Below, piece after piece: positions 14,215-37,602 of a DNA stretch of 43,680 nucleotides (its first letter is position 1; each line of letters opens with the position of its first letter). The stretch is from Paramoeba atlantica (lineage: Eukaryota; Protista; Discosea): the NCBI GenBank assembly GCA_977017575.1, contig CDRNVI010000031.1:1-43680 (forward strand), given 5' to 3'. The notes below the pieces were generated by a model. The model worked only from the letters and a program-made list of their open reading frames with translations. It made no database searches and was not told where the DNA came from. The translations under genes and the position numbers were made by a program.

Positions 14215-14225
14215 GCAACAAGGTA
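14215..14225 (-). other. 3' end of spliced-leader exon (GTACCTTGTTG)
   Basis: 11/11 match to the 3' end of the SL copies at 16610 and 30575. Lies 72 nt upstream of the ATG at 14142 and abuts a transposon end. Confidence 0.6.
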
Positions 14226-14226
14226 C

Positions 14227-15345
14227 CCCCCCCTACTTATGCGCAACCGTTTAACCCGGCCACTTAGGCGCAATTTTGACGCATCGTTCAGAAGAACAGC
14301 GCCGCAAAGCGGCGCGATATTTTTTTTTGTGGTACGAATTTTTGTACCAATTTTCGCCGCTGTTGAAATGGAGAGTCTGCAGGTAGTCCCTTTGGGCGTT
14401 CAAAAATGATCATCGATCTCCAGCGATCTCCTCTGATCCACACTGACCTCCACCGATCTGTACGGCTAGTCTTTGCATACTATACTGTACTGTACATCAG
14501 AGGAACTCTCCTGCCACGTACTGTACGCTTTTGAAATGATCAGCGCACCAGCGTGCGGCACCGCCTAGATGTGAGGCGGGTAAAGATAACGTGGGTAACT
14601 GCACTACAAGTGCATGAAAAATTAAACTTTAATTTATATTTCGGACCCATGCTCTTAAAAGTCCGTTCTTTTCCTACAATTGATCGGGTGCTCGCAAAAA
14701 AGCCACTCACCCCGTGATGTGGTCATTCGCGGGCATAAGTAACCATACAAGTGAAGTACTGTACCTCCTCCCTAGTTATCTCTCACACGTCACCCCCCTA
14801 GTTATCTGCCACTTTTCGGTCCTTCAATTTTTTTTTCGTCAATTACTCCCCCTAGTTATCTGTCACTTTCATAGCTATTGTTTTCCAAAAAAAACTTAAA
14901 ACGAAATTTATCCCCCTACTTATTTGTCACCTTTCCACGAAAAGTTGTGACAGATAACTAGTGGGGTTTATTAGCGTTCCTATTGGGGTTCATTAGCGTT
15001 GCTTTCTAGACTCTTTCTTGCTGCGAAGCTATGGTAAAAATGTACCCTAAACAGCGATTTTTTTGAAAATCTTCCTCAGTAATCCCACAACATCGGCTTA
15101 GCAATTCTTCGGCCCCAGTTTTTGCCCCCCCCCTCCTAGCGTTGCATTTCATCCCAGCAAGGGCACGCTAGGATAGGGGGGATATTATATAAAGCAGCCC
15201 CCAAGGGCACCCCGCGTATATAACTCATGATTGAAGCACGCACCGCGAAGCGGCGCGAAATTTTTTTTTCACCTCTTTTTTTGACCCGGCTACTTATGCG
15301 CAATTTTAGGCCAAAACCTGGTTGCGCTTAAGTGGGGGGGGACAG
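14227..15345. mobile_element. Nested non-autonomous TA-targeting (Tc1/MITE-like) elements
   Basis: CCCCCCCTACTTATGCGCAACC at the left matches the inverse of GGTTGCGCTTAAGTGGGGGGGG at the right. Subterminal CCCCTAGTTATCTG repeats. 15060-15345 is homologous to 24125-24427. Confidence 0.6.
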
Positions 15346-16161
15346 TACAGGTTTACCTCGGAATGAAGAAACGCTAGGATTGGTCGCTCTGAAACGAGCC
15401 AAGCAATTAGCTCTTAGTCATCAGTATCTGTGCCTCGAAGCATTTCTTGTCTCCTATACCAGGGCTCGATACTAGCCGAGCGGCGCTTATGTTTTTCTTG
15501 CCTATCATCACATCACAGTAAGGTACAATCATTTACTCTTCTGCCATAACATCATACATTGTGTATGGCATTACACATCATTACCTACATGGTATCATAC
15601 ATTTGGTATAGCATACATACATTGGTAGCGCATCATACAGTAGTACAAACAGTAGTATACTGTACATACTGTAGCGTATCTGTAGTATACTGTATAGTAG
15701 TCAACATGTGCCAACGAGGCTATCCAATGCTGGTCGTGTATCGCATGGTGATGGACACGATCCCGTGAGGATACCCCTACGACCATTGATGCTCTCCGTC
15801 TAAGTGCTGGTCGTAATCTGTAAACTACATGTGATCCATAATTCTTGTCTCTTATTCCAGAGCTCGATCCTGCGCCTTGTCGTGGCGCTCTGGCTTAACA
15901 CCCGCAAGAGTTAACCAAGACATGTAGAAACACATTTGAACATTTGAAACACATTTGAAAAATGTGTAATGGGGTAATAAGGGAAATAAAATTGAAATAA
16001 ATCGCAACAAAATCTGCGCCGCTTCGCGGCTCCTGTTTTCTCCTACTGACAAATAAGTAGGCGGTGTAAAATTACTACCTTCTCTGAGAACTGACAAATA
16101 AGTAGTGCTTTGTCTTAGTAGGCAGAGCAGTACCTTGAACTAGCACTTGTACTTTAACACC

Positions 16162-16605
16162 ATGCAACGTGTCGTACGCGCGGTTGATGTCCCCTCTCGA
16201 CCCAGTAAGGTACGAAACGCGGTCCTCCCACAAGAATACAATATGTTTCGACTACTGAGTAACGCCAGTTTCGCTGAGGAGTCATGGACCGAGAAAACGC
16301 CTGCTTGTGTGTGGAAGCATGTGGAGTGTAACGATGAGGGAGAAGTGACAAAGACACAATGGACCAGATACGAAAGGGTATACGTGTATATACAGGAAGA
16401 GAAGAGAGTCTCTCTAAAAGGTGCACTGCGATTGATTTTCCTACCCGACACATTGACCTCCTTCGATGCTTCCTTGCAAGAGGTTTTGGAGGGGCACGTA
16501 GACTTGGCGGTTCTACCGGCAGGATTGAAAACGTTTGACATTCGTTCGAATCAGTTCAGCGGAGGTTTGGATTTAACCCATTTGCCGTCTACTCTGGAAG
16601 ATTTT
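16162..16605 (+). pseudogene. LRR subfamily A copy 1, 5' part (interrupted)
   Basis: High identity to intact 20349-21065 up to ...LPSTLEDF, then replaced by the SL-headed insert. Confidence 0.9.
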
Positions 16606-16609
16606 CTTT

Positions 16610-16641
16610 AACGATAAAGATACAGTTTCTGTACCTTGTTG
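16610..16641 (+). other. Spliced-leader exon copy AACGATAAAGATACAGTTTCTGTACCTTGTTG followed by GT
   Basis: Shares the ACAGTTTCTGTAC core, the TTG end and the AACG 5' block with the trypanosomatid SL AACTAACGCTATTATTAGAACAGTTTCTGTACTATATTG. Confidence 0.85.
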
Positions 16642-17427
16642 GTACATTTTGCTAGCCCTTCCTTTCTTTTCCCGGAAACGGGCATATTCTTACTTTTAAA
16701 TGCCCGTTTCCGGCTGACGGCTAGCTGGAACTGTTCCTCTTTGTCGCGGAAGTAGGGGACGCACTTCGCACTCTTCACCCCTCCCCGGCTCGCTCTCTTC
16801 GAGTGAGCTTTCTTCCCTCCCCGGCTCTCTCCTTCTCGTGCTTTCTTCTCCCGGGAGCTATGGCCTCCCTTGAGGACCACTGGGCGTGCTACAGCGGGAG
16901 GACACGTTGTATGCGTGTATAGGGGATGCGAACTTGCACCCCTCTCTCCCTACATGCTGTAGCGAGTGCGGCGGTAACGGACCTCCCCATGATGCATCAT
17001 GATCCACGATAGACCATCTGACAGCATGAACCCACGGCTTGACCGTGTTGCAGCATGAACCATGGCTATACGTGCTGTAGCATGACCGATGGTCACGGTG
17101 GCCTCCCTTGAGGACCACTAGGCGTGTCCTCCGCCGACGAGACTCCCGGCTCTCCGCACCTGGGGGTCGCCCAGCTCTCTGCACCCCGGCTCTGTCGCAG
17201 CTCTCTGCACCCGGATTGCCCCCGAAACTGTAATATGGGGATTACGCATCCGGCTCTCTGCACCTGCACATGACAACCGAGCTCTCTGCACCTGAGACCC
17301 CAGCTCTCTGCACCCGCACACCTCCGGCGAGGGCGAACCCTCACTTGATCCACCCGTCGCATGCGGGCACGGACTTTGTGAGCATAATCTCTGCACTATA
17401 AGTGCATGAACGAACAATGTGCATTGA
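16610..17427 (+). mobile_element. SL-headed non-coding SINE-like unit 1
   Basis: SL, nested hairpins (16650-16725), pyrimidine tract, 28-bp direct repeat (16861 and 17099), about 7 CTCT(C/G)CAC-type motifs, and 3' hairpin TGCACT-ATA-AGTGCA. Confidence 0.7.
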
Positions 17428-18007
17428 AAAGATGCAGTTTCTGTACCTTGTTGGTACTTTTTCCTTAGTTAATCCTTTCTTTCCCCGGCAACGGGCATAC
17501 TCTTACTGTATTTTTATGCCCGTTGCCGGCCGGCACTAAGGTCGGAACTCTCCCTCTTGTCGCTGAAGCAGGGGACGCGCTTTCACCCCTTCACCCCTCC
17601 CCGACTCACTCTCCTGGAGTGAGTGTGCTTCCCCCTCTCGGCTTTTATCGACTCGTCTTTTTCCTCTCCGAGAGGGCCATGCGTCACGGTGGCCTCCCTT
17701 GAGGACCACTAGGCGTGTCCGCCGCCGACGAGACTCGGTTCTCCGCACCTGGGGGTCGCCCAGCTCTCTGCACCTCGGCTCTGTCGCAGCTCTCTGCACC
17801 CGGATTGCCCCCGAAACTGTAATATGGGGATTACGCATCCGGCTCTCTGCACCTGCACATGACAACCGAGCTCTCTGCACCTGGGACGCCAGCTCTCCGC
17901 ACCCGCACACCTCCGGCGAGGACGAAACCTCACATGATCCACCCGTCGTATGCGGGATAAGGACATGGTGAGTAAATCTCTGCACTATAAGTGCATGATA
18001 AAACACA
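17428..18007 (+). mobile_element. SL-headed non-coding SINE-like unit 2
   Basis: Starts AAAGATGCAGTTTCTGTACCTTGTTG|GTAC. Homologous to unit 1 but lacks its 210-bp internal segment; same 3' hairpin at 17981-17995. Confidence 0.7.
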
Positions 18008-18210
18008 CCTTGGTCACAATAGTCTGTGCGGAAAACCTGATCTCACCAAGCTCCCGGAAGAGCTAACATGGGCCATGCTCCTTCACAACCTTTTCGTCAT
18101 ACCTGACTTTATTCCGGAAGGTGTTCGCATCAAGCCATATGTGAGAAAATAGCATCCACCCTGTAGATATAACCCATGCAGTCTGAAGAACCGACGTAAA
18201 AACATTTTTA
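18008..18210 (+). pseudogene. LRR subfamily A copy 1, 3' part
   Basis: ACCTTGGTCACAATAGTC...AAAAACATTTTTA aligns to 20857-21060. About 71 bp of LRR sequence is missing at the insertion site. Confidence 0.9.
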
Positions 18211-18348
18211 TATAAAATGCGGTACTTGGAGTAGGTAGACTGAAGTATTAAAGGAGTACTTCAGTAGTAAAACTACCACTCTATTTTAGAATACGACTTA
18301 ATAAAATTTTCTACTGCGAAATATTACGGAGTATAACACTAGAATCTA

Positions 18349-20040: not shown

Positions 20041-20348
20041 TATATAGTACGACGCATGCATAGTACGACGCATGCATGTGTGTGAAATATGGTTTCTCAC
20101 TCAAGGTTGAGAAACCCCACATTGCACGCCAAACAAAGCACGGTACAAGTTGTTTACCACGTGAACTGCATGTAACAAAATGATTTTTAAATCCAAATCA
20201 CGTGCAAAGAGGTTTTAGATTTTAAGAGTAGTATTTATCTCAATAATGTGCAATAGGGTAATAAGCAAAATAAAAGGGTTAGGCGATGATAGTACTTTAT
20301 CTTAGTAGGCAGAGCAGTACTTTGAACTAACACTCGCACTTCAACACC

Positions 20349-21065
20349 ATGCAACGTGCCGTGCGCGCGGTTGATGTCCCCTCTCGACCCAGTAAGGTAC
20401 GAAACGCGGTTCTCCCACAAGAATACAATATGTTTCGACTACTGAGTAACGCCAGTTTCGCTGAGGAGTCATGGACCGAGAAAACGCCCGCTTGTGTGTG
20501 GAAGCATGTGGAGTGTAACGATGAGGGAGAGGTGACAAAGATACAATGGCGCAAATACTTAAGCGCATATACAAAGGAAGAGGAGAGAGTCTCTCTAAAA
20601 GGTTCACTGCGATGGAATTTCCTACCCGACACATTGATCTCCGTCGATGTTTCCTTGCAGGAGGTTTTGGAGGGGCATGTAGACTTGGCGGTACTACCAG
20701 CAGGACTGAAAAAGTTTGACATTCGTACGAATCAGTTCAGCGGAGGTTTGGACTTAACGCATTTGCCGTCTACTCTGGAAGATTTGAGTTTGGGATCCAA
20801 TCGTTTTGAAGGTGAAATTGACCTTACACGCCTCCCCGATACTTTGAAAAGGCTCGACCTTGGTCATAATAGTCTTCGCGGAAAACCTGATCTCACCAAG
20901 CTCCCGGAAGCGCTAACATGGGCCATGCTCCTTCACAACCTTTTCGTCATACCTGACTTTATTCCGGAAGGTGTTCACATCGAGCCATATGTGAGAAAGA
21001 AACATCCACCCTGTGGATATAACCCGTACAGTCTGAAGAACCGACATAAAAACATTTTTAAATAA
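20349..21065 (+). CDS. Leucine-rich repeat protein, subfamily A (intact, 238 aa)
   Basis: N-cap W...CVWKHVEC followed by 23-aa LxxLxLxxNxFxGxxDLTxLP repeats. Confidence 0.9.
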   Translation: MQRAVRAVDVPSRPSKVRNAVLPQEYNMFRLLSNASFAEESWTEKTPACVWKHVECNDEGEVTKIQWRKYLSAYTKEEERVSLKGSLRWNFLPDTLISVDVSLQEVLEGHVDLAVLPAGLKKFDIRTNQFSGGLDLTHLPSTLEDLSLGSNRFEGEIDLTRLPDTLKRLDLGHNSLRGKPDLTKLPEALTWAMLLHNLFVIPDFIPEGVHIEPYVRKKHPPCGYNPYSLKNRHKNIFK

Positions 21066-21799
21066 AATGCGGTACTTGGAGTAGGTAGACTGAAGTAGTA
21101 CTTAATAAACATTTCTCTTGTAAAATGTTACGGAGTATAACACTAGAATCTAGTTTTCTTTGATTTTTATATGATTTACGTGTTAGAGTCGAATATCAAT
21201 CTATGAATAGGTTTAATGGAGTTAAAACTATTCAACACAGTTAAAAGATGTCACAGAGTCTGTCTGTAAGAATTTTGCATAGCCAATACACGCAACGCTA
21301 GATTCTTTCTAGCACTATACATTGTAATATATATTTTTTGGGTTCACCGGCACTATAAATGTAAATTGAAAGCAAAACAAATCGTAAAACCAATTTGGTC
21401 CAAAGGATAATTGATTTTGGTCAAAAAAAGTTGAAAAAGAATTAATAATTTCTTTTTTTTTTAATTTCTAACAGTTGCCTCAAGAATACGACCCGTTGCC
21501 CCTGGAAACTACACCCATAGACCGTGGATTATTTCGCTTTAGGTGGAATTTTGGAAAAGCACGGAAACTTGGTTCAATCTTGTGGGCTTAAAACAGTAAA
21601 CCTCAATTTTTTTGTGGAACTAAAGTTTTTACTAGCGCGCCACAACCACATAAATTAACGTAACTTTAATTAACGTAGCATTAATTAACGTAAACACTTT
21701 TTTCTCCCAGAAATTACGTTAAATAATGTTATTCTTAATTAAAGTTTCACCGATATCCTAACTTTACCAAGTCAACTGGAGAAAATTGGCATTTTTCCA

Positions 21800-23174: not shown

Positions 23175-24124
23175 ACATACTCTATACCCCCCTATACCTT
23201 CCCCCTGGAACCCCCGGGATCCCCCACCCGGGTCCAGCGAACTCCATAGCCGAAAAAACGCCAAGTACTGTATGCCATTGGTTTCTTTTGGGACCTGACT
23301 GGGTTTGCCTCGGTTTGCATTTTACTGGTTTCAGTCCTCTTAGATATACAATTTCTTTTCAGTGGGAATTTGCTACACCTGTTGCTTCGTATCTCCCTCG
23401 CCCCTTTAAGCCTGGGTTCTATAAACCCACGAAACGTGATCAGCTGGCCACCCGCTGAAAAAATGGCCAACTCGTCACCCCCTGAAAAAGTTGCCTGCTG
23501 ATCATCCCCTGAAAACGTGGCCGGCTGACCATCCCCTTAAAAAAGTGGCCAACTCACCACCCGCTGAGAAAGTGGCCAGCTGGCCATTTTTTCACGGGGT
23601 TGTCAGTTGGCCATAAAAAATAGTACTTCTTTTTCGTTCATTCGTTATGGCCCCGGCCACTGAAGCACGTTTTGAAGAACCAAATAGTTCGCGAACTTAG
23701 TTTAGGAGCTGAAAAAGATTCCCCAAATTTTGAAACAGTTGTAGTTTATGAAATTGGGGATGATAATGAATCGTCTTTGCGATTTTTTATTCCACGCCCG
23801 CACACTTGAGCGTTCCGCACACTTGAGCGAGCCGCGTTCCGAGTCACGATTTTAGTAAACAGGTTCTAAAAACTGCGTACTCACTACGGGGATAGTGAGT
23901 ACTCACTACTCACTGAGACTGGGTAGTGATACTCCTAGCATGGGGATTATGAAAAAAAAAATATTGCAGCTGTGATTTAATCTTAAGATTTTCTTTAGTT
24001 TCTATTAGCACTGTTTCGGAAATGATTAAGAAGGCAATACGTCTCTTCTGAGGCAAATTAACCCAGTATCTTCTCAACAAGAACGTAAGCGCATTCACAC
24101 CTCTCACCCCACTCCTTACCACAC

Positions 24125-24427
24125 TCCACAGTATCCTCGTCCAACAATTATTGGGCCCCTGGTTTTTACCCCCCCCCCCTCCTAGCGTTGCTTTTCACCA
24201 AAACCAGGCAACGCTAGGATAGGGGGGGAGAGTAAGTGGGGGGGACTATGACAAATAAGTGGGAGGCACAGTACTTAGAAATGCATTTAGAAGTACATTA
24301 AAAGTGTATTCAAAAAATTATTTGTTTTGCGCAATTTAGGTACTAATCCTCCCAAAAGACAATGAGTAACCACTGTATGCACTATTCGAAGCCAAAACTG
24401 GATTGCGTTGAAGTGGGGGAGACAGTA
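24125..24427. mobile_element. Non-autonomous element end, homologous to 15060-15345
   Basis: Hairpin TCCTAGCGTTGC...GCAACGCTAGGA, and terminus GTGGGGGAGACAG|TA. Confidence 0.6.
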
Positions 24428-24599
24428 TGTAAAAACATTTAAATTATAAAGGTTCGCTCATCGTTAACCATCGATAAATTCATCCGAAAATTCATGAAAC
24501 ATCGATAAATACCCATCCATCTGCTGCCTACATTTATGGTTCACATTCGACTAAAAGAGTCCCATTTTTCCTCTACCTCTCTTTCTCTTCTACCCCCCC

Positions 24600-26198
24600 A
24601 TGCGTCCTCCCACCCCTTTTTCCTCCCCACTCTACGCCCTCACCCGTCGTTTCACCACCATCCTGGCCGTACGCAAAGGCAACGTGGTCGCACTGATGGG
24701 CGACAGCCGCGTCACTCTGGGCCAAAGCATCATTGCCAAAGACACCGCCCGGAAACTACGAAGGGCGGGACCTCCCCTCATCTCCCGCTATGACCGCAAA
24801 CCCCAACCCCGAGGAGAAAGCGCAGGGGTCTATGGTGAGCGAACACCACCGTACACCACGCCCCCAAAAGACGAAATCGAAAAACAACACAATCTACCCT
24901 CGGTAACTCACGGATCAAAGACCTTTCCTCCTTCGTCTTCTTCCCCACCTCCTCATGCGTCACAACAACAAGAAAACGAAAGGTTCAAAAACCAAACCCC
25001 AACCCCAACTCCAACAACAACAACAACAACACCTTTTTCTTGCCAAGAAAAACAAAACCTTTTCAAAAATAAACCAACAACAACATTAACAACACAAGAA
25101 GAAGAAGAACAACAACAAGAGAAGAAAAACCACAACCCCAACCCCAACCACCATGAAAAAGGTGGTTCTTCATCTTCGGGGTCTTCGGGGTCTTCTTCTT
25201 CTCTCAACCCCCAACCCCAAGAACAACCCCCCCCACCCCCGAACCCCAACGACGCCCTTGGCTCCGTCATGGTCGGCTTCGCGGGCTCCACCGCGGACGC
25301 CATGACACTCCTCTCGAAGCTCGAGGCACAGCTCGCGGCGCACCCCGCCCAGCTCACCCGGGCCTGCGTCGAGCTCGCGAAGGAGTGGCGCGGGGACAAG
25401 AACCTCCGCCGGCTCGAGGCCTCCATGGTCGTCTGCGATGCCAAGGAGACGCTGGAGATCGATGGCGCAGGCAACGTGCTGACCCCCGAGGCGGATGGGA
25501 TTGTGGGGATTGGCAGCGGGGGGCAATACGCGAAGGCGGCCGCAAGGGCGCTGGTGGGGGTGGAGGGGTGGGGGGCGGAGAGGGTGTGCCGGAGGGCGAT
25601 GGAGGTGGCGGCGAGTATTGATTTGTTCAGCAATGACAGGTTCGAGGTGGATGTGATGGTGGGGGAGGGGGAGGGGGGGGAGGGGGAGATGGGGGAAAAG
25701 GGGGGGATGGGGGGAGAAGGAGAAAAGGGGGGGATGGGGGGGAAGGGGGAGATGGGGGGAGAAGGAGAAAAGGGGGGGATGGGGGGGAAGGGGGAGGTGG
25801 GGGGAGAAGGAGAAAAGGGGGAGATGGGGGGGAAGGGGGAGATGGGGGAAAAGAAAGGGAAAGAGGTGGGAATGGGGGAGAAAAAAAGGGGAGAGGACAA
25901 CGGGGAAGAGGTGAAGGAGAAAGGGGAAGGGGGTGAGGGGAGAGGGGAGGGGGGGAAGGACGTGGGTTCCGAGGTTGCGGCTGAGGAAAGGCCGGCGGGG
26001 GGGGAAGAGGGGAAGAAGGGGTCGGTCACCCACGAGGGTGGGAAGACGAAGCGGGGTGAGGAAACGGATGGGGAAAAGTCGGGGGCTCAAGGGGAGAAGG
26101 CACGCAAGGCGAGTCCAAAGTTAGCGAAAGATGCGCCCGCTGCTGATGTCAAGCCGTGCGATTCGAGTGTGAAGTCACCCAAAAAGGAGAAGAAATGA
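24600..26198 (+). CDS. hslV: HslV (ClpQ) threonine protease subunit with probable mitochondrial presequence, a 161-aa internal insertion and a 178-aa C-terminal tail
   Basis: 18-aa Arg-containing leader, then TTILAVRK (catalytic Thr, codon 19). Motifs GFAGSTADA, ELAKEWR, LRRLEA and GIGSGG. ETLEIDGxGNVxTPEADGIV resembles the trypanosomatid HslV as I recall it. Confidence 0.95.
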   Translation: MRPPTPFSSPLYALTRRFTTILAVRKGNVVALMGDSRVTLGQSIIAKDTARKLRRAGPPLISRYDRKPQPRGESAGVYGERTPPYTTPPKDEIEKQHNLPSVTHGSKTFPPSSSSPPPHASQQQENERFKNQTPTPTPTTTTTTPFSCQEKQNLFKNKPTTTLTTQEEEEQQQEKKNHNPNPNHHEKGGSSSSGSSGSSSSLNPQPQEQPPPPPNPNDALGSVMVGFAGSTADAMTLLSKLEAQLAAHPAQLTRACVELAKEWRGDKNLRRLEASMVVCDAKETLEIDGAGNVLTPEADGIVGIGSGGQYAKAAARALVGVEGWGAERVCRRAMEVAASIDLFSNDRFEVDVMVGEGEGGEGEMGEKGGMGGEGEKGGMGGKGEMGGEGEKGGMGGKGEVGGEGEKGEMGGKGEMGEKKGKEVGMGEKKRGEDNGEEVKEKGEGGEGRGEGGKDVGSEVAAEERPAGGEEGKKGSVTHEGGKTKRGEETDGEKSGAQGEKARKASPKLAKDAPAADVKPCDSSVKSPKKEKK

Positions 26199-27068: not shown

Positions 27069-27779
27069 ACAAAAATTGAATCTTTGGAAAATTGAAGCAC
27101 ATTTAGGCACATAATTTTTGGTGAAATTGAAGCAAAAGTTTAGCTTTTTTTATTTCCGATTTCTGTAATAACAAATGGGTCACCGGCAGTGCAAATGTAG
27201 GTTGAAATGTGTTTTTTTGTAAAAAGAAATTTTTTCATAAATTGTATCTTAAAATCGGTGTTGTATTGTATTTAAACGTTCGGTGAACGGTTTTAGCGGC
27301 ATTCAAAGTGGTATTTCAACTCTTTTACACTCTGCTTTCCACTGACTACAATTCACTTACGTCACATACAGTTGCACGGGTACAGTTGTCGGTTAGATAT
27401 CAAGAAAACACTACTCTCTACATACATTGTATATGTATCTTCACTTACTTGAGGAGCTGTCGGTGGCGAGATTTCACGAGATTTCGCGAATATTCACCGG
27501 GGGGTTATCATGGTTTCGCGAGGTTTCATCGACGTTTCGAAAGGTCTCGTCGAGGCTTCTAGGGGTTTCAAAATGTAAAGAGGAACACAGGAATAAAGGA
27601 AAAATTTACTCCGCCTCCCATAAGTACAGTGGTGATCAGCGTCTTTTACCCGCCCCCCTACAGGTCTTGTATTTTGTTCGATTTTGGAAAAATTTTGTAT
27701 GGGACTGTTTTTCGACCCAATCGTTCCGAATCCGAGGTCCTTCTCACTTGTGGACACCTGAGGAGCTGCGAGTATCATC

Positions 27780-27905
27780 TCGCGTAATCTCGCGTGATCT
27801 CACGTGATCTCGTTTTGAGGTCGTCCAACCACCCTCCCGAGCCAAATCCGCTCTCGAGAGATCTCGCGTGATCGCACGTGATCTCGCATGATCTCGCGTG
27901 ATCTC
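27780..27905. repeat. Degenerate 10-bp tandem repeat GATCTCGCGT
   Basis: Seen directly in two blocks. Confidence 0.75.
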
Positions 27906-28401
27906 ATACTGGGCCTCACCCGCAGCCCCTCATCTGTATCATTCCTAAACTGGAGAAAAAGCTACAAAAAACTCGATATTTTTTTTACAGAGTACATTTT
28001 TTTCAAGATCAATACATTTTAATAATTCATGACAAAGGAGCACCGCCCCCTATGTTTACCTTACTCTCGCGTGCGCCCTGAGATGCGCACGGCACTCGTG
28101 ATTGAATACGGGCGACTTAAGTCCTATAAGGCAGTCGCAAAACTTCATAAATTATAGATCCTCCACAGGAGGGCTGTGTGAGAGCTCTCGAACGTGCTAA
28201 CATTTTCCAAAATTGGCTAAAAGTTTTACAAATTTTAGACCCTCCCCAGCATTAGCTGATCCCCCCTGTGTACTACATTTGTTCGATGGCTTAAGGCAAT
28301 GAAAATTACCTTAAAATCCAGTAAAAATACGTTTGTTCATTCGTACCCATCAAATATGGAAGATTTATTATTATTTTCTTATTTATTAATATTTTCTTCT
28401 A

Positions 28402-28978
28402 CAGGGGGGATCAGCTAATGCTGGGGGGTCTAAAATTTGTAAAACTTGGCCCATTTTGGAAAATAATAGCCCATTCGAGAGCTCTCACACAACCCTCCTG
28501 CGGAGGATATGTCGTTGTGCATAAAATCGACAGTTTTATAAAATGGTGGGAGGGTCAAAAACGTCGATTGCAAGTTTTTTAAGAAATTCTGACGTTGTTT
28601 CCCCGAAACGTAAAGCCAAGCCTAGTACTCACAGTGACGCCCGTTCCTCTCTATAGCAATATTTATGTACCCTGGGGTGAGAAACGGCTCTCCGGCAATT
28701 TCTCCCGAAGTGAACGTGAAGATACTCATCTTTGAGGCATGAATCATGAAAACAGGAGAAATCTCAAAACAAATCAAACAAATTGCAAAAAATGCAAGTC
28801 GAACGTGTGTAAAAGCACGGGAAACGACAACAAAACGCGCTTCGTGTGTAAAAACACGGGAAACGATATACCCTCCACGGGAGGTCTGTGTGAGAGCTCT
28901 CGAATGTGCTATTATTTTCTGAAATTGGCCAAGTTTTACAAATTTTAGACGCCCCCCAGCATTGGCTGATCCCCCCTG
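28402..28978. mobile_element. Tc1-type MITE, 577 bp, TIRs of about 105 bp, TA TSD
   Basis: TA|CAGGGGGGATCAGC...GCTGATCCCCCCTG|TA. An additional orphan right end lies at 28160-28268. Confidence 0.9.
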
Positions 28979-29054
28979 TATTTATTATATTATTATTGTT
29001 ATTTTCTCATGAATTCTTGTGTTTGTTTTTTTATTACATTTACCTTGAAGATTA

Positions 29055-29873
29055 ATGCACGGCACCTACTGCATCGATGACGGCTCCGATTTACGTCGAG
29101 GCAAAGTGACCTCTCTGCTGCTACCCCAAGAGGATATGCTGGAGCGTTTCATTTCAAATCTAACGGGAAGGCACAAATCATGGCGTACGACGAAGAAGAA
29201 TATGTTAGGACGCGTCAAACATGTATCGGTATGCAAGTGGAAAGGCGTCACATGTGATAAGGATCAGACTGTGCGCTACATTGAATGGTGTTCAATGAAT
29301 CTTTTGGGCACCTTAAAATGGGAGTTGTTGCCTTATACGGTAGTTTCCTGCAAATTGATTCGTAACCGACTAATGGGAACGGTTGAACTGGACACTTTGC
29401 CATCTTCTTTATCGCTTTTAATATTAGCAGACAATACTTTTACCGGGGAACTACATCTATCCGATTTGCCTGACACTTTACAGAATTTTAGTGTGAATGA
29501 TAATAAATTTGAGGGGAGCGTAGATCTTACGAATCTGCCTTCGACGTTAAACGCTCTATATCTTAATAATAACCAGCTTTCTAGTGCCGTCGATCTTTCT
29601 CACCTACCGGACTTGGAATATCTCTACTTGAACAATAACATGTTTACAGGGCCTCTCTCTCTGGGACATTTGCCCGCATCACTTAGGTTTGCTAACTTTT
29701 ACAATAACTTATTTTGTGGCTTAGTAACTTTTGACGGTCTTCCCAAAGGCTTGACATTATTGTCCCTCCACAGTAACAAATACCTTTATGGCGAGATTGA
29801 CCGTTGCGTGCTTCCTAAGACTTTGCGAATTCTGGAATATTATGACACAGAAATTCATATGAAATCTACGTAG
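29055..29873 (+). CDS. Leucine-rich repeat protein, subfamily B (272 aa)
   Basis: LPQEDML, cap CKWKGVTCD, then about 6 LRRs. Confidence 0.9.
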   Translation: MHGTYCIDDGSDLRRGKVTSLLLPQEDMLERFISNLTGRHKSWRTTKKNMLGRVKHVSVCKWKGVTCDKDQTVRYIEWCSMNLLGTLKWELLPYTVVSCKLIRNRLMGTVELDTLPSSLSLLILADNTFTGELHLSDLPDTLQNFSVNDNKFEGSVDLTNLPSTLNALYLNNNQLSSAVDLSHLPDLEYLYLNNNMFTGPLSLGHLPASLRFANFYNNLFCGLVTFDGLPKGLTLLSLHSNKYLYGEIDRCVLPKTLRILEYYDTEIHMKST

Positions 29874-30574
29874 TGTTTTGAGTTTCCGAGAATACCACTT
29901 TCCTATTTTCGTATTTTTAAAGTCCAGTCCCGGTGAACTGGTTATCTTTTCTTCGCTACCCTTCCTGTGGTACTCACAAAATGAGAGACAAGTTTCGCCA
30001 CTTCGCACATGGCGTTGTCGAATACACTGAGTTCTCCTGTACTGACAATTCCCCCAACAGTTTTGCCAACTTAGACTTCTCCTCTCTTGTAAATCCCCGT
30101 AACAGGCGAACGTCAATACGTTTCTTTAAAGAAAAATTGTTTGGATTGCTTATCGAAGAAGCACATACCACCATTTCTTATGAGTTCCTTTTTCTAATGG
30201 GAAACCTTTTTATATGATTAAAGAATTTCGTACAGAAATCTCAATGTTTGGCTGCTCTAGGAATTTGCTGATTACGCAATGCATCCTACTTGTTACTGTC
30301 CTGTCTCATTAGCGCGGCGCCAAGCGCGCAGAGCCCGATATTTCCCTTGTTTTCTTTGTGCTGCAAAGATCCTTACTGTTTTGGTACTTTCTTTTTTTAC
30401 TGTTTTTGGTACTTTCTACGACCGGGGTCACTTCAAAATGTTCCAACTCTGCATCAAGCGCGCAGAACCCATCTCGCAAGGTTACTACGACAGCTTGAGA
30501 GAGCTTTGTCGGATGAGAAGGTATCACGCACCATCGCATCAATGGTCCGTCGGACTACTCGAGCTCCATTCTCA

Positions 30575-30600
30575 AAAGATACAGTTTCTGTACCTTGTTG
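30575..30600 (+). other. Spliced-leader exon copy AAAGATACAGTTTCTGTACCTTGTTG
   Basis: 26/26 identical to 16616-16641. Not followed by GT; an ATG follows 42 nt later. Confidence 0.85.
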
Positions 30601-30642
30601 TACTATGTTGTATAGAAATGATATGCGTCTGTAGCCCCTAAT

Positions 30643-32133
30643 ATGGCAAGCTCAGACGTTCCTGCACCAGCATCACGGGTGGAACGACATGTGAGGATCA
30701 GGAGCACCACAAGTATGACATTGACAGCGTTCACGGGCATTAAGTCTGCGGCTGCCAGCTCTCTCGTCAAACAGTTTTACCCAAATCCCGAGACCGGTCG
30801 CGCCGCCCTCACTAACGCGCTCGATAAAAACAATCCAGCCTGCGGACTCATGGTCGAATCGACCGAACTGTTTAGGTATAGAGTTCGACATCGAGGAGCC
30901 GATGAAGGATGGACCTATTATCCGAGCGTTGCTGACCTACATGCCAGGAAATTTTCTTCTACTTATTCCCGCGTCGACTCCCTCAGTCGTGCCCTCGTCA
31001 GATATTTTGAAGGATCTCCTCCCAAACTCCTGCCCTTTGAAATCGAATCATTGCCCACAGACAGTCAAGAAGCATCATCGACACCAATCGCCACCGAATG
31101 CAAACACAGCTGTATAAACAAGGAAACATGTTCCCCATGCATGCTGTAAGCGACATCTTACGGGCCATGCGAACATCACTCCCAACGAAGAGCCCCGGAC
31201 TGCGACAAGTAGCAATGCGGACACGAATATCGCTCCCAACGAAGAGCCCCGGGGTGCAACAAGTAGCAACGCCGACACTAGCGAGTGTAAACACCCTTGT
31301 CGCGACAAACGTACCTGTAAGCACTTATGCTGTAAACGTCACTTGCCTTCCCGCACTGCTGTAGAATCTCCAACTGCTGAGCCACAGCATGAAGGCGGAA
31401 CCTCGCAGCATAGCGAAACACAGGTGTCTTCTCGGGAAGTTGAAGAATGTAAGCATATCTGCACCGACAAACGCGCATGCAAACACCTATGCTGCAAACG
31501 TCACCTATCGCTTACCCTTGTCCATCCCGACGATAGCTCTGGAATAGACGCCACCGACTCACATCGCGAATCGCGCGATTTACCCCCACCACGTCCAGCA
31601 CAGGTCCCTCCTAGCTCCAACAAACCGAGAACCCGTTCAGTCCCTACACGCACAACTTCTTACTCTGCTGGAAATGACAACACCTCTCCGGAAACAAGAA
31701 CCGTCTACCACACACTGCATTCGATTGGTAGTACTGTCGGAACCTACATCATAAGCACCGCGCGTCAAGTTCTCGCTACAAGTACCACTCCGGGACACAA
31801 ACCGCATCTCAGTAGAATAACTGAGCAAAACCTTTGTGGTAATGCCCAGATAGAAAACACAGAAGAACTTTCACAAGTAACATGCAAGCTGAAACGGACA
31901 CGACGGAAACGATCCGGCCCACAGAATGTAAGCATGTCTGCGGGAACAAGCGTACGTGCCTTCACCAGTGTTGCAAAAGACACCTGGATAGCGCCCCAAC
32001 ACAGCAACAGCGTGACACCGCGGCAACCCAGTACACGGGCGACGAACTCCCAGCACCGCTTCCCCCACCACCGCATGAACCTAGTGAAGTACACTTACCT
32101 TCCCCCACTACCCCGCAGTACGTCGAAATTTAG
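30643..32133 (+). pseudogene. SL-preceded, frameshifted ORF with four C-x-H-x-C-x5-C-x-H-x-C-C zinc-finger repeats
   Basis: ECKHSCINKETC(SHA)CCKRH, ECKHPCRDKRTCKHLCCKRH, ECKHICTDKRACKHLCCKRH and ECKHVCGNKRTCLHQCCKRH. +1 frameshift in a C4 run near 31133 and a second shift at about 31850-31880. Cut at about 32120 by the GTGCTCTGAGAGC repeat. Confidence 0.75.
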
Positions 32134-32317
32134 TGCTCTGAGAGCAAAAATACGCTCGCGCGACCCCCGCTAAATAGGGGGGGAAGGTGGTAGTCGTGGG
32201 GTATGGAGGCCTTCACGCAACTCCGGGGCCTTACCGGGAACAGAAATGAGACACTATGGTTCCAGTATTTATAGCCCGTAACTACTTTTTTGTAAAGCAC
32301 TCTTTAAGTGATGAAAA

Positions 32318-32729: not shown

Positions 32730-34260
32730 GATTTCGTGCTCTGAGAGCAAAAATACGCAAAAAATCGCCCCATTTTTACCCGAAAATCGGCTATTTTTGG
32801 CTATAATCCTTCCATTTTCTTCAGCTTTCCCGGCCAATTTTTCTTTTTTAGGCTCTTCGTTAAACGCGGTGGTAGTTTTCAACGCGAAGCGCGCAGCGTG
32901 AGTGACTTGTAAGTTGAAAACAACCACCGTGTTTAACGAAGAGCCTAGAAAATTTATATTTTTTAGTGGAAGGTATCAAACGGCCCAAATTCGGGTTAAA
33001 ATTTAGCAATGTTCGCCTAAACATCGGGCTTTTTCACCGGAAAAAATAGATTATTCATGATGTTTGGGCAATTTTTCTTTTTTAGTGGCTTCGTTAAACG
33101 CGGTGGTTGTTTTCAACTTAGAAGTCACTCATGCCGCGCGCTTCGCGTTGAAAACTTCCTCCGCGTTTAACGAAGCCACTAAAAAAGAAAAATTGCCAAA
33201 ACATCATGAACAATCTATTTTGGTGTGTGAAAAAGCTCGATTTTTAGGGGAACATTGCTAAATTTTAACCTGAATTTGGGCCGTTTGATACCTTACTAGT
33301 AGGGGTCGGAGGCTAATCTGATGAAAAAATCGTCTCCTACTCTACCACTTCCCTGCGCTCGATTTCGAAAAGCAAAAAATTCGAAAGAAACTTCTTGACG
33401 TATGCCCCCCCCATGGACCCCCCCCATGGACCCCCCCCCCCTAGACCCCCCATTTTTTTCAATTTGTTTTTCATTTTTGGGCCACCGGGCCCCCCTTTTA
33501 TATTTTTTTCTTTTATTATATTACTGTGTTCCCCTTTATATTTTCACTGTTTTTGTTCACTTTTTCTTCAATAATCGAGGGTAGAGCGATAGTTATCCAA
33601 CCACCGCAATAATCGAGGGTAGAGCGGTAGTTATCCAACCACCGCAATAAGCCTCTGCGAGAGGTTTTGTGATTTCTTTTTTAGGCTCTTCGTTAAACGC
33701 CGTGGTTGTTTTCAACTTAGAAGTCACTCATGCTGCTTCGCGTTGAAAACTACCACCGCGTTTAACGAAGCGCCTAAAAAAGAAAAATCGCTAAAAGATC
33801 ATGAATAATCTAGTTTTTGAGGTGAAAAAGCTCGATTTTTTGGCAAAAAATGCGAAATTTTAACCCGAATTTGCGCGGTTTGATACCTTTCCAGTAGGGA
33901 TAGGAGGCTAATCTGACGAAAAAATCGTCGCAGAATGGTAGCTGAGGTCCCAAACTCTTAAATTACGTTTTAAGAGTCGGTTTTGGAAAAACAAATTACA
34001 TTAATTAAAATTACATTATTATTATTTTTTGGATCAAAAAAGAAACCTTTTTGGTCCCCTCCTTGTTGGACCCAACCTTGTTTCCCAACCTTGTTGGACC
34101 CCTCCTGCGCGTTCCAGGGAGGCAAAATCCCTCTTTTGCGAGCAAGGCCCAACTGTGAGCGAAGTCCACTTCTGGAGGCAAAAGCTTCAGCGCGCGGGTC
34201 GCGCACTGAGAATCTGTGTCTAGGATTGTGCAACGCGGACAAACAGCGCGGGTGAGCTCA
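32730..34260. repeat. Composite palindromic repeat cluster, including a 325-bp fold-back (32970-33294)
   Basis: Three copies of the GTTTTCAAC-loop-GTTGAAAAC hairpin, plus a reverse-complement copy of 3966-4165 at 33400-33650. Confidence 0.85.
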
Positions 34261-34451
34261 CAGAGAAGTTGAAAGCTGTGTGACCCAATTTACCCGTCCG
34301 GAGGAGCTCTACCACTGATGAGTATGGCGGGGGAAGATTTATGGATAGAAAGGAATTTTTCTGTCCAAAGGCACTTTATTTGTCCAAAGGCATTTTATCT
34401 GTCCAGAGGCATCGGTCCTGTCCGGCCGCCATTGCGGTAGTTGTATAACTA

Positions 34452-35282: not shown

Positions 35283-35888
35283 ATGGAAAACTCATATGTC
35301 TTGATGCAGACGGGTATGATGCCCCCACAGGTTACACAGAATGAGGTTTCTGACTGGAGGCTGTACGACACCCTGAGAATTACAACATCAGTTGCAACCC
35401 GCGTGGAAAAGGAAATCACCGGTCAGACTGCTGTCGGTGAGCTCTCCGACTACGATAAACCGATTATCACCACTTCAGTCGGAACCCGCATGGGGGAGGA
35501 CAGTATCGATCCAATCCCTTCTTCAGTGGCAAGAGGGTCGCTTGACGTTCACAAGGCTCCGCAACATAACACGCAAAGAAAATATGAAGATGTGAAGAAA
35601 AATCGACGTTTGTCAAGCAAAATCAAACGTCTTGAAACGAAGATAGAAAAAAACTGCAAAACTTTTGCGCTAGAGAACCTAGCAACTTTGCGAGAAGAGA
35701 ACGTCATTTCAGCCAACACCAAAAAGAAATTAGAAGAGCGAAATAGGCTCATAGAAGCAGAGTGTGCTTCCAAGGCACTACATGAAAAGTATTTGTTGGA
35801 AGTCCTCGGAAAAATTCAAAAACAGTACATTTATACAAGCGCTAGCGAAACAAGTGAGAAAAAAAACTGTGAAGCGCGGGCGTACTAA
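35283..35888 (+). CDS. Lys/Glu-rich coiled-coil-like ORF, possibly the N-terminal part of the adjacent transposase
   Basis: 201-aa open frame between a TA|CCCCCCCTG left end (34981) and the DDE region. No recognisable motif. Confidence 0.35.
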   Translation: MENSYVLMQTGMMPPQVTQNEVSDWRLYDTLRITTSVATRVEKEITGQTAVGELSDYDKPIITTSVGTRMGEDSIDPIPSSVARGSLDVHKAPQHNTQRKYEDVKKNRRLSSKIKRLETKIEKNCKTFALENLATLREENVISANTKKKLEERNRLIEAECASKALHEKYLLEVLGKIQKQYIYTSASETSEKKNCEARAY

Positions 35889-36084
35889 AAAGACCAAGAG
35901 AGGACTCAAACCGCGCGATACCTCCACTTTGATTGTTCAGAAAGGAGCAAAAGGTAAGGGCTCCTTGAGCAAAGAGGGGATATCGAATTTTAAAGCCTTG
36001 CTTTAACATATAGGTAACCCCTATATTTTACAAGGCTTTTTACACCTTTCCAAGTTCGATTTAAACTGATGTACCAGAGAGCTG

Positions 36085-36900
36085 TTGGTTGATGAAACGG
36101 AAATAGTATATACTACTATACTATTATGTAGTATGTATTATGTATATAGTACACCTGGAGTTTTTCAGCGTTGGCAACTGGCCTACATGTTTAATTTGGA
36201 GAAAACGACATGTCCAAGGGTTTGGTTTAGCGACTACGACTCAGGTTCTCTTAAATCTGAAAACAGCCCTATTGGCAAATGGGAAAACCTGGAAAAAGCA
36301 GAAAGTCTTCTACCTAAAGCGTTGAGCGAAACACGCTCTTTGTCCTTAAATGACATCGGTGACGCGTACAGCCACATCACCCATGGTACTCTTGTTCCCT
36401 CGCGTCACAGGCCCTGCCAACTTCTGACTAACAATGGATACTCATATTCAATGAAGAAGAGAGATCTGTGTCTCACGCAGCGGCAAAAAGAGTACCGGAT
36501 CAAATTTGTCGAGGTGATGCTCAGGCAAGACTCGACCTTACTCGACCGTTTGGTTTTCTCTGACGAAACACCAATTTTAGCAGGAGATCTGAGCAAGAAG
36601 GCATGGCAGCACCCTGATGCTCCCGTCTTTATGGATCGCCCTGTCGTCTTTATGGATGATGGAGCCCCTGGGCATCGAGCGAAGGATACGATGCAGTGGT
36701 GGCTAGCTCGCGGGGATCTTGCCGTGCTACGCTCACTGCAAGCAGAGGAAGATGGACCTTTTCTTCGTTGACCAGCGGACTCCCCTGATCTCAACCCGAT
36801 AGAGAATATTTGGGACGCAGTAAAGCGCTTCAAAAATAAGAAGCGGCCACGAACCAGGCAAGAAAGCGAAGTGCGCCAAACCCCACGTGTCATTTCAAAA
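36085..36900 (+). pseudogene. Tc1/mariner-like transposase pseudogene
   Basis: LVFSDET, FMDDGAPGH, then in-frame LR*PADSPDLNPIENIWDAV (TGA at the Trp position). Internal deletion at a repeated GTCTTTATGGAT. Confidence 0.85.
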
Positions 36901-37053
36901 GCGACACAGAATGGTTATTGAGTATAAAGGTGAGAAGATACCTTTTTGAAATTATAGAGAATTATAGAGAGAGGCGGTGCGGGCGTTTTCTAAGTTCGTT
37001 CGAGTCGGAGCTTATCTTAGCGTCGCGTGGAAACACTAAACCTGTGATGAAGA

Positions 37054-37365
37054 TTTTGCTTGGTCTGGGTAGGTCGTGCGTGAGGGGCCGGCGTACCTAA
37101 TTAGCTTAGGTCGGGTCAATAAGGGGAATCTGTTAGCGGAGAAAAAATCCTTCTCTGATCCACTTTGCGTTTGGTACGTGGCAAGGCCACGAACGACCTT
37201 ACCCTTTCCTTTTGCTTGGTCTGGGTAGGTCGTGCGTGAGGGGCCGGCGTACCTAATTAGCTTAGGTCGGGTCAATAAGGGGAATCTGTTAATGGAGAAA
37301 GAATCCTTATCCGATGCACTTTGCGTTTGGTACGTGGCGAGGCCACGAACGACCCTATCCTTTCC
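37054..37365. repeat. 156-bp tandem duplication
   Basis: Units start at 37054 and 37210 and are nearly identical. Confidence 0.9.
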
Positions 37366-37564
37366 CTCTATTCGCCACACAGGTGTAATTCTCTGCGCGA
37401 TGCACTTGAGTAGCACCCGCCACCGTCCTTGGTTACCGGACGTGTATACGCACATGTTTTATTCAGTTGACATTGTTTTTCTCTTGTGCTTTACTTACTT
37501 GTAGGTTCATGTTACACAAATAGCAGTCATTTAGATGGAGGCACAGGAGTAGGAAATCTACTCA

Positions 37565-37602
37565 AACGATAAAGATACCGTTTCTGTAAAAAGGTACCTT
37601 CT
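37565..37602 (+). other. Degenerate spliced-leader copy
   Basis: AACGATAAAGATACCGTTTCTGTA is 23/24 identical to 16610-16633, followed by AAAAG-GTACCTT. Confidence 0.75.

What the first reader, a model, noticed from the sequence alone, without database searches (positions are those of the whole stretch)
14215..37602. Five dispersed spliced-leader copies with non-random 5' break points: a candidate SL-anchored retrotransposition system
Seen: SL-exon copies at 14215-14225 (-), 16610-16641, 17428-17453, 30575-30600 and 37565-37602, outside any homogeneous SL array. Two begin at AACG and two begin at AAAG. Established: trypanosomatid SLs start AACTAACG, the first four nucleotides carry cap4 modifications (including m3U at position 4), and CRE/SLACS/CZAR non-LTR elements insert near nt 11 of the SL exon and duplicate the rest of it. 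Inference: if this SL also starts AACT, AACG is nt 5 (where reverse transcription of a cap4 RNA would stall) and AAAG is nt 11 (the CRE-type site). Both nt-11 copies lie directly after other sequence, as a 3' target-site duplication would. This points to a family of SL-targeting or SL-carrying retroelements, both coding and non-coding.
Basis: partly seen in the sequence, partly recalled or inferred. Interest (0 to 1): 0.9.

Follow-up and report, generated by a model that had tools for sequence, protein, structure and literature searches.

The report
Spliced-leader heads on retrotransposed copies
The five sequences are DNA copies of the cell's own spliced leader at the front of retrotransposed elements, so those elements were copied from trans-spliced RNA. 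They are not jumping genes that target spliced-leader genes, and this is one local sample of a genome-wide pattern the scan has already met on other contigs.

Summary
All five spliced-leader (SL) copies are real, but two boundaries and the numbering are wrong. The true SL RNA gene, found elsewhere in 5S-linked arrays, reads AACTTTAACGATAAAG...CCTTGTTG|GTATGAGAAG. So AACG is nt 7 and AAAG is nt 13.

- **The two "AACG" copies are not truncated.** 16606 carries the SL from nt 3. 37560 is a diverged full head shared by at least 54 repeat copies.
- **The two AAAG copies (17428, 30575) really start at nt 13.**
- **None is followed by the SL intron.** Each heads a retrocopy: an ORF1-like gene (14216, minus strand), a chimeric SINE array inside a leucine-rich-repeat (LRR) gene, a 1.5-kb Cys/His-finger element, and a ~430-bp repeat.

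Genome-wide there are about 880 SL copies. Roughly 53% are full length and about 24% start at nt 10-13, mostly SINE heads. SL-headed LINEs with intact reverse-transcriptase ORFs exist.

All 40 copies with the true intron are intact from nt 8. CRE/SLACS-type targeting and the cap4-stall reading are therefore not supported. "SL-carrying retroelements" is supported.

The scan reported the same phenomenon on other contigs of this genome. Perkinsela and dinoflagellates are published analogues. RNA evidence here was inconclusive.

The parts
14216..14226 (-). 11-nt relic of the SL 3' end (nt 28-38). A G-run precedes it and a 74-nt 5' UTR follows.
   Evidence: The exact 11-mer has 0.01 expected by chance. 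It lies on the same strand as, and just upstream of, the ORF below.
13339..14163 (-). 274-aa ORF (first ATG at 14141) of an ORF1-like family whose relatives are headed by a full SL.
   Evidence: 49% identity to the ORF in L048, and 25% to L011/L013; in L048 that ORF directly follows a complete SL flanked by a direct repeat. Pfam and Atlas gave no hit.
16605..16641 (+). Complete SL head (an extra T, then SL nt 3-38), joined to LRR-gene sequence at 16604/16605.
16606..17092 (+). 5' 487 bp of a type-A SINE-like element: SL, then GTACATTTTGCTAGCC..., then nested stems.
   Evidence: 96-98% identity to L031, L051, L057 and L059; those copies continue differently after this point.
17093..17427 (+). 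3' module of a type-B SINE, joined to type A at an ATG microhomology. It ends in the hairpin CTGCACTATAAGTGCATGA (17391-17409), then ACGAACAA, then 9-10 extra nt.
   Evidence: It is 92-96% identical to L042, L044 and L035.
17428..17453 (+). SL nt 13-38 (A19 changed to G), the head of the next element.
17428..18006 (+). Complete type-B SINE-like element with the same hairpin tail (17980-17998).
   Evidence: It is colinear with L044 and L042.
16103..18250 (+). LRR gene split by the 16605-18006 insertion. About 71 bp of target is missing relative to the paralogue at 20290-21100, and no target-site duplication is seen.
30575..30600 (+). SL nt 13-38, exact, joined directly to the element body.
30601..32152 (+). 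Low-copy element with a 168-aa ORF and a 276-aa ORF carrying repeated C-x-H-x-C...C-x-H-x-C-C fingers. Its 3' side is cut by a high-copy repeat starting near 32153.
   Evidence: Relatives on C15, C12 and C2 (70-79% identity) also start with truncated or stuttered SL heads, two of them after (TG)n runs.
37560..37604 (+). Diverged full-length SL-like head. It matches the SL at 26 of the first 29 positions, then has an 8-nt insert.
   Evidence: At least 54 genomic copies share this diverged head, including ACTCAAACG.
37560..37983 (+). ~430-bp non-coding repeat that this head belongs to.
   Evidence: copies at 90-93% identity on C9, C4, C30, C3, C44 and C24.

Best explanation
**What they are.** The five sequences are DNA copies of the host spliced-leader mini-exon. 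Each sits at the 5' end of a retrotransposed sequence, and they belong to four or five different families:
- a 5'-truncated ORF1-like copy (14216-14226, minus strand);
- a head-to-tail chimeric array of non-coding SINE-like elements inside an LRR gene;
- a 1.5-kb Cys/His-finger ORF element;
- an older ~430-bp repeat.

**How the SL got there (inferred).** In this kinetoplastid-type genome, Pol II transcripts are resolved by trans-splicing. Element RNAs therefore carry the capped SL at their 5' end. LINE reverse transcriptases encoded elsewhere in the genome are themselves SL-headed: one has zinc fingers, RT and a restriction-like endonuclease, the other is L1/ingi-like. These enzymes copy such RNAs back into DNA, leader included.

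**What the 5' end of each copy records (inferred).** It shows how far cDNA synthesis and 5' joining got. Poly(A)-tailed LINEs mostly reach nt 2-3. Hairpin-tailed SINEs and the finger element typically end at nt 10-13. Older copies have diverged.

**The tandem SINE array (inferred).** It is best explained by template switching or jumping of an R2-type RT during one insertion event, or by serial insertion at the same nick.

**Shown here:** the anatomy, the family memberships, the genome-wide counts, the intact RT ORFs and the intact SL genes. **Inferred:** trans-splicing of the element RNAs, and which RT mobilises which family.
For: **True SL RNA gene.** AACTTTAACG...TTG|GTATGAGAAGC occurs in tandem arrays interleaved with 5S rRNA genes.

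**Genome-wide spread.** The SL 3' 20-mer gives 877 hits against 0 for the reversed control. In an unbiased set of 30 loci, most read A-run + [A/T/C] + CTTTAACG...TTG + short UTR + ATG ORF.

**SL-headed LINEs.**
- L073 has a 1201-aa ORF with RVT_1 at 1.4e-17 and a poly(A) tail. Its best solved relative is the R2 protein. By eye it has N-terminal zinc fingers and a C-terminal Cys/His motif followed by RPAD...D.
- L076 has a 1557-aa ORF with RVT_1 at 2.7e-21.

**Window copies.**
- The window SINE copies match dispersed SINE copies in unrelated flanks.
- The LRR paralogue defines the insertion.
- The orfA homologue in L048 is directly SL-headed.
- Relatives of the 30575 family are SL-headed at different break points.
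- At least 54 copies share the 37560 head variant.

**Break points.** Hand tally of 300 listed hits out of 811: full length about 53%, nt 10-13 about 24%.

**Signs of reverse transcription.** Snap-back inverted heads, stuttered partial heads, and an unspliced SL RNA retrocopy ending in an A-run.
Against: - **No direct RNA evidence.** The only candidate RNA run is held as contigs. Its HslV contig starts at 24559, at the G of an AG acceptor (24558-24559), with no SL letters. Trans-splicing at that AG is compatible but not shown.
- **Propagation is unexplained.** An SL-headed DNA copy lacks the acceptor at the SL/body joint. Most copies may therefore be dead on arrival.
- **The partner LINE was not found.** No LINE with the SINE's 3' hairpin occurs in the loci I hold.
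- **The nt 10-13 preference is unexplained.**
- **Copies are not independent.** The assembly holds tandem arrays and near-identical duplicates; C56 is 99% identical to this window. The percentages are rough.
Confidence: 0.85

Rival explanations
1. CRE/SLACS/CZAR-type site-specific retrotransposition. An element cuts SL RNA genes near nt 11 and duplicates the rest of the exon, so the AAAG-starting copies are 3' target-site duplications.
For: - Two window copies start at nt 13, directly after other sequence.
- Genome-wide there is a peak of starts at nt 10-13.
- RLE-type LINEs exist in this genome.
Against: - The sequence after the truncated SLs is SINE or element body, not the SL intron GTATGAGAAG.
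- All 40 copies with the true intron are intact from nt 8, and 36 from nt 3.
- About 20 SINE copies with nt 10-13 heads are preceded by unrelated unique DNA.
- SL-headed LINEs sit after A-runs or (TG)n, not in SL genes.
Confidence: 0.03
2. Insertion into the SL head of a resident element, for the tandem array only. One SINE landed at about nt 12 of another SINE's SL head. The 'full' head at 16606 would then be the old nt 3-12 fused to the newcomer's truncated head, and 17428 would be the leftover nt 13-38.
For: - It explains why the 16606 head is exceptionally complete for a type-A SINE while 17428 starts at nt 13.
- Most SINE cDNAs end at nt 10-13.
Against: - 9-10 unexplained nt (TGTGCATTGA) lie between the first element's tail and nt 13.
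- The first unit is itself an A/B chimera joined at a microhomology, which points to template switching.
- No other example was seen among about 25 SINE loci.
Confidence: 0.08
3. The SINE heads are variant SL RNA genes, or an SL-RNA-derived SINE that can still donate a leader. They keep the exon, a GT right after it, and conserved stems.
For: - Both SINE subfamilies keep G|GTAC after the exon.
- Two nested stems show compensatory differences between subfamilies.
Against: - Beyond GTA there is no similarity to the real intron, and no upstream promoter is conserved because the flanks all differ.
- Most copies lack nt 1-10 of the exon.
- Copies lie inside genes.
Confidence: 0.04

Closest known systems
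DinoSL relics on dinoflagellate retrogenes (PMC5585692, PMC6050394, PMC12014239)
   Same: A spliced-leader sequence normally added at the RNA level is written into DNA at the 5' end of retroposed copies. It serves as a tag of retroposition from trans-spliced RNA.
   Different: The dinoflagellate cases are mostly cellular genes, with nested truncated relics produced by re-splicing at an AG inside the SL. Here the heads sit mainly on LINE, SINE and other mobile families. Most are single and complete, and nested relics are rare and look like RT stutter.
Perkinsela sp. SL RNA fragments and SL-bearing L1Tc-like transcript (PMC5601477, main text and Supplementary Notes 1.2-1.3)
   Same: This is a kinetoplastid genome littered with more than 500 SL RNA-like fragments, some next to retrotransposons. 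An ingi/L1Tc-like transcript carries the SL, and reverse transcription and reintegration were invoked.
   Different: The Perkinsela fragments include many intron-containing and decayed SL RNA genes. Here only about 40 copies carry the intron, and most of the ~880 are mini-exon heads fused precisely to element bodies, including a large SINE family.
CRE clade: SLACS, CZAR, CRE1/2 of trypanosomatids (PMC12278014, PMC4728078)
   Same: These are RLE-type LINEs of kinetoplastids whose biology is tied to the SL. Both routes give the element RNA an SL-type capped 5' end.
   Different: CRE elements insert at a fixed position inside SL RNA genes and borrow the gene's promoter and first nucleotides. Here SL genes are intact, and the elements carry the whole SL and land in A-runs, (TG)n and genes. 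Clade membership of the RT was not resolved: the named relatives among the best 120 hits are dinoflagellates, a sponge and Diplonema.
ingi/L1Tc with the Pr77 internal promoter (PMC1874656, PMC8190864)
   Same: These are kinetoplastid LINE/SINE pairs that share a 5' module.
   Different: Pr77 drives unspliced transcripts from an internal promoter. Here the shared 5' module is the SL itself.

Membership tests
CRE/SLACS/CZAR site-specific LINEs | Insertion at a fixed site (about nt 11) inside SL RNA gene exons | tested here: not met
   40 copies carry the SL exon plus the true intron. 36 are intact from nt 3, and the other 4 read ACGATAAAG from nt 8.
CRE/SLACS/CZAR site-specific LINEs | The target-site duplication leaves the rest of the SL gene (exon 3' part plus intron) after the element | tested here: not met
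   After 17453 and 30600 comes SINE or element body (GTACTTTTTCC..., TACTATGTTG...), not GTATGAGAAG.
CRE/SLACS/CZAR site-specific LINEs | Single ORF with RT plus a C-terminal restriction-like endonuclease | tested here: inconclusive
   None is in the window. Elsewhere, L073 has RVT_1 and its best solved match is R2. A Cys/His motif plus RPAD...D was read by eye only.
CRE/SLACS/CZAR site-specific LINEs | RT groups phylogenetically with the CRE clade | not tested
   No tree was built. No trypanosomatid CRE protein appears among the best 120 hits.
SL-relic retrocopies (processed copies of trans-spliced RNA) | SL exon in DNA fused directly to a transcript body, without the SL intron | tested here: met
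SL-relic retrocopies (processed copies of trans-spliced RNA) | The same sequence is the leader on the organism's mRNAs | tested here: inconclusive
   The canonical SL RNA gene arrays argue for it. The only RNA-like run is contigs without SL letters.
SL-relic retrocopies (processed copies of trans-spliced RNA) | 3' poly(A) or other retroposition hallmark | tested here: met
   LINE copies have poly(A) tails. SINEs have a hairpin plus a short A-rich tail. The window copies at 14216 and 30575 have no identifiable 3' end.
SINE (non-autonomous retroposon) | Short, non-coding, many dispersed copies in unrelated flanks | tested here: met
   about 150 of the 189 SL+GT hits are of the GTAC type.
SINE (non-autonomous retroposon) | 3' end shared with a partner LINE | not tested
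   No RT-coding locus that I hold ends in the hairpin. Earlier scan notes claim such a partner.
SL RNA gene | Exon followed by the GTATGAGAAG intron, in a tandem 5S-linked array | tested here: not met
   The window copies lack the intron and any array context.

The most novel reading that the evidence does not exclude
The genomic SL heads may be a fossil read-out of the cap-proximal chemistry of this organism's SL.

- **Where faithful copying stops.** It stops at C3. The next base is variable, although the sampled gene copies (8-10 copies on 4 contigs) have A. In 57 distinct flank contexts it is T 36, A 11, C 7, G 3. In an automated set of 23 it is T 12, A 7, C 4.
- **The unspliced SL RNA retrocopy also starts at C3.**
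- **One RT lineage ends at nt 10-13.**

This would fit a base-methylated first or second adenosine (cap4-like) that is misread by the element RTs, plus a second barrier specific to one RT or RNA class.
Probability: 0.2. Interest if true: 0.6.

Novelty: new variant of a known kind. Interest (0 to 1): 0.45.

Why it matters
- **A different way to get a 5' end.** In a genome without gene-specific promoters, several retroelement lineages (RLE-type and L1/ingi-like LINEs, a large SINE family, ORF1-like and finger-ORF elements) take their 5' end from the host's trans-splicing machinery. They write the leader back into DNA about 880 times. Trypanosomatid elements use two other solutions: the Pr77 internal promoter, or insertion into SL genes.
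- **A built-in tag.** The SL head can be used to count and date retroposition events.
- **A possible natural record** of how reverse transcriptases handle the hypermodified cap region.

For this particular finding the practical result is corrective. The window's five copies are ordinary members of that pattern. The proposed SL-targeting mechanism does not hold.

Tried and rejected
- **Rfam on the window.** There was no SL family hit. The only hits were sub-threshold plant or animal miRNA models on palindromic MITE-like repeats, which I judge spurious.
- **Pfam on ten window ORFs and Atlas on two.** Nothing for the SL-headed ORFs.
- **Full-text search for the SL sequence.** 0 papers.
- **Sequencing runs.** Four runs of unknown kind from one study, plus one guessed-RNA run held as contigs.
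- **Read laying on 24000-29999 (6,000 letters).** The HslV contig starts at 24559, at the G of an AG acceptor (24558-24559), with no leader letters. This is inconclusive for the SL on mRNA and for its true 5' end.
- **The first idea, that 16606 and 17428 are SL RNA genes.** Rejected once the true intron was found.
- **The idea that nt-11 heads are inherited from one truncated master.** Rejected because SINE copies with heads reaching nt 3, 8 and 10 exist.
- **Limits reached.** Two encoding-contig look-ups returned contigs that look like the same organism. I used them only to look for a hairpin-tailed LINE, found none, and did not harvest more.
- **An open alternative.** I could not read the base before CTTT in the large arrays on C97, C107 and C74. 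A T-variant SL gene as the source of the T-headed copies is therefore not excluded.


Full report
**1. The observation**

They are far beyond chance. The 24-mer AGATACAGTTTCTGTACCTTGTTG occurs three times against 0.00 expected. The 11-mer GTACCTTGTTG occurs four times against 0.01 expected. A sensitive short-query scan finds no sixth copy.

**2. What the real spliced leader is**

A genome-wide search of the window's own assembly (45.7 Mb, 248 contigs; the window is the whole of contig C31) gave 877 hits of the SL 3' 20-mer. The reversed control gave none.

- 189 hits are followed by GT. Reading 30 of them showed two kinds.
- A minority reads ...cccttgttAACTTTAACGATAAAGATACAGTTTCTGTACCTTGTTG|GTATGAGAAGCTTCGAAC..., in tandem units.
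- 40 copies carry this intron start. They lie in arrays on C97 (12 copies, about 2.56-kb period), C107 (9 copies), C74, C11, C3 (1,454 bp) and C24.
- The units hold 5S rRNA genes at 93-99 bits. That is the classical arrangement of an SL RNA gene array.

With the first A of AACTTT as nt 1 (uncertain by one), AACG is nt 7-10 and AAAG is nt 13-16.

**3. The five window copies, one by one**

*(a) 14216-14226, minus strand.* This is SL nt 28-38. A G-run precedes it. A 74-nt UTR and a 274-aa ORF follow. That ORF is 49% identical to an ORF in locus L048. In L048 the ORF directly follows a complete SL bracketed by a direct repeat. The relic is therefore a 5'-truncated head of an SL-headed ORF1-like family.

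*(b) 16605-18006.* This is an insertion in an LRR gene.
- 16103-16604 and 18007-18250 align with the paralogue at 20290-20785 and 20857-21100.
- About 71 bp of target is missing and there is no target-site duplication.
- The insert starts with an extra T followed by SL nt 3-38.
- What follows the exon (GTACATTTTGCTAGCCC...) is not the SL intron. It is the body of a dispersed non-coding family.
- The first unit is a chimera. Its first 487 bp are 96-98% identical to type-A copies, which continue differently. The next 335 bp are the 3' module of type B, joined at an ATG microhomology.
- 17428-18006 is a complete type-B copy whose head starts at nt 13.
- Both tails end in the hairpin CTGCACTATAAGTGCATGA plus a short A-rich stretch.

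*(c) 30575-30600.* This is SL nt 13-38, fused to a 1.5-kb element. The element has a 168-aa ORF and a 276-aa ORF rich in C-x-H-x-C...C-x-H-x-C-C fingers.
- The copy on C56 is a 99% duplicate of this whole contig region.
- Three diverged relatives (70-79% identity) carry truncated or stuttered SL heads. Two of them sit after (TG)n.
- The window copy is cut on its 3' side by a high-copy repeat near 32153.

*(d) 37560-37604.* This is a diverged head, ACTCAAACGATAAAGATACCGTTTCTGTA, then an 8-nt insert. It belongs to a ~430-bp repeat. At least 54 copies share the diverged head, including ACTCAAACG. It is therefore an old full-length head, not a copy truncated at AACG.

**4. The machinery**

In an unbiased set of 30 loci, most SL copies read A-run, one variable base, CTTTAACG...TTG, a 20-60-nt UTR, then ATG.

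- Extending seven loci showed intact long ORFs behind the leader.
- L073 has 1201 aa, RVT_1 at 1.4e-17, a ~4.1-kb element and a poly(A) tail. L076 has 1557 aa and RVT_1 at 2.7e-21.
- L073's best solved relative is the R2 protein. By eye it has N-terminal zinc fingers and a C-terminal Cys/His motif followed by RPAD...D, a restriction-like endonuclease signature.
- L076 weakly resembles L1 ORF2.
- Named relatives of L073 are dinoflagellate, sponge and Diplonema proteins. No trypanosomatid CRE protein is among the best 120 hits.

**5. Break points genome-wide**

I listed 300 of the 811 exact hits of N22+ACAGTTTCTGTAC and tallied them by hand, weighting by class size.

| Start position | Share of copies |
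|---|---|
| Full length (to C3) | about 53% |
| True SL genes | about 2% |
| nt 4 | 5.5% |
| nt 7 | 3.9% (mostly merged with an A-run) |
| nt 10 | 3.6% |
| nt 11 | 11.7% |
| nt 12 | 3.5% |
| nt 13 | 5% |
| nt 14 or later | about 7% |

The nt 10-13 peak is mostly SINE heads. Among GTAC-type heads listed, the starts were nt 8 or earlier 9, nt 10 7, nt 11 14, nt 12 6 and nt 13 5.

Heads reaching nt 3, 8 and 10 exist in the same family. The truncation is therefore made anew at each insertion and not inherited from one master. Copies are not independent, because of tandem arrays and near-identical contigs. The percentages are rough.

**6.

- No SL gene is broken at nt 11-13. 36 of the 40 intron-bearing copies are intact from nt 3. 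The other four all read ACGATAAAG from nt 8.
- The sequences after the truncated heads are element bodies, not intron.
- The DNA in front of about 20 truncated SINE heads is unrelated unique sequence, not an element tail.
- A stall at cap4 is contradicted by the majority of copies, which reach C3.
- What survives is [quoted passage not shown].

**7. An unexplained detail**

In full heads, faithful copying stops at C3. The preceding base is T in most distinct contexts, although the 8-10 sampled gene copies (on 4 contigs) have A. In my hand list of about 57 distinct flanks it is T 36, A 11, C 7, G 3. In an automated set of 23 distinct heads it is T 12, A 7, C 4. An unspliced SL RNA retrocopy (L045) also begins at C3.

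This could reflect a modified cap-adjacent adenosine, untemplated addition, or a T-variant gene in the large arrays that I could not read.

**8. RNA evidence**

Only contigs were available. The candidate RNA run covers the HslV gene. Its contig starts at 24559, at the G of an AG (24558-24559), without leader letters. This is compatible with trans-splicing there but proves nothing.

**9. Prior knowledge**

- Dinoflagellate retrogenes carry DinoSL relics (PMC5585692, PMC6050394).
- Perkinsela has more than 500 SL RNA-like fragments, some beside retrotransposons, and an L1Tc-like transcript with the SL (PMC5601477 and supplement).
- CRE-clade elements insert in SL genes (PMC12278014).
- ingi/L1Tc use the Pr77 promoter and unspliced transcripts (PMC1874656).
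- The scan's own earlier notes report SL-headed LINEs, SINEs and tyrosine-recombinase elements on other contigs of this genome. I re-tested the core claims independently here.

**10. Verdict**

The window shows ordinary local members of a genome-wide and moderately novel pattern. It is not an SL-targeting system.

Noticed in passing
window 32832-33334, 33673-33929, 39511-39632, 4616-4838: A high-copy palindromic MITE-like repeat of about 110-260 bp, present in both orientations. It is the source of the sub-threshold plant miRNA hits in Rfam.
   Followed up: partly
window 14599-14625 (+): A further copy of the SINE/LINE 3' hairpin (CTGCACTACAAGTGCATGA plus an A-rich tail). It is probably the 3' end of another 5'-truncated element lying tail-to-head with the 14216 relic.
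   Followed up: no
L036 (G000:C3:779248-782268), L053 (G000:C11): True SL RNA genes alternate with 5S rRNA genes on the opposite strand. On C11 and C24, pairs of SL genes lie 297 bp apart.
   Followed up: partly
G000:C56, about 212,000-238,400: A 99-100% identical copy of much of this window, including all five SL copies. The spacing between the two SINE heads differs by 26 bp. It is either a haplotig or a recent segmental duplication.
   Followed up: partly
L023/L065 (C2:374574), L064 (C12:562008), L056 (C12:566753): Several SL-headed copies of the finger-ORF element and of the SINE sit directly after long (TG)n runs. This suggests a microsatellite target preference for the hairpin-tailed group.
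   Followed up: no
L029 (C2:553054-553097), C12:715653-715696; L007, L010, L025, L080:6360-6440: Snap-back inverted SL heads, and 'partial SL 5' piece + few nt + full SL' doublets. They look like RT template-switch products rather than re-splicing relics.
   Followed up: partly
G000:C1:9752-25049; C21:289-9449; C22:111411-155746: Tandem arrays (5.09-kb unit x4, 2.28-kb unit x17 or more) in which every unit contains a full SL. In the 5.09-kb unit the SL is bracketed by a 26-nt direct repeat of the following UTR.
   Followed up: no
window 24600-26198: An HslV-type protease gene (Pfam Proteasome, 2.1e-16) with long low-complexity insertions. It is covered by the candidate RNA run.
   Followed up: no
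window 36085-36771: An ORF ending in ...FMDDGAPGHRAK, which looks like a remnant of a Tc1/mariner-type DDE transposase. Pfam gave only a weak unrelated hit.
   Followed up: no
window 37054-37365: A 156-bp unit duplicated in tandem at 94% identity, just upstream of the 37560 repeat.
   Followed up: no
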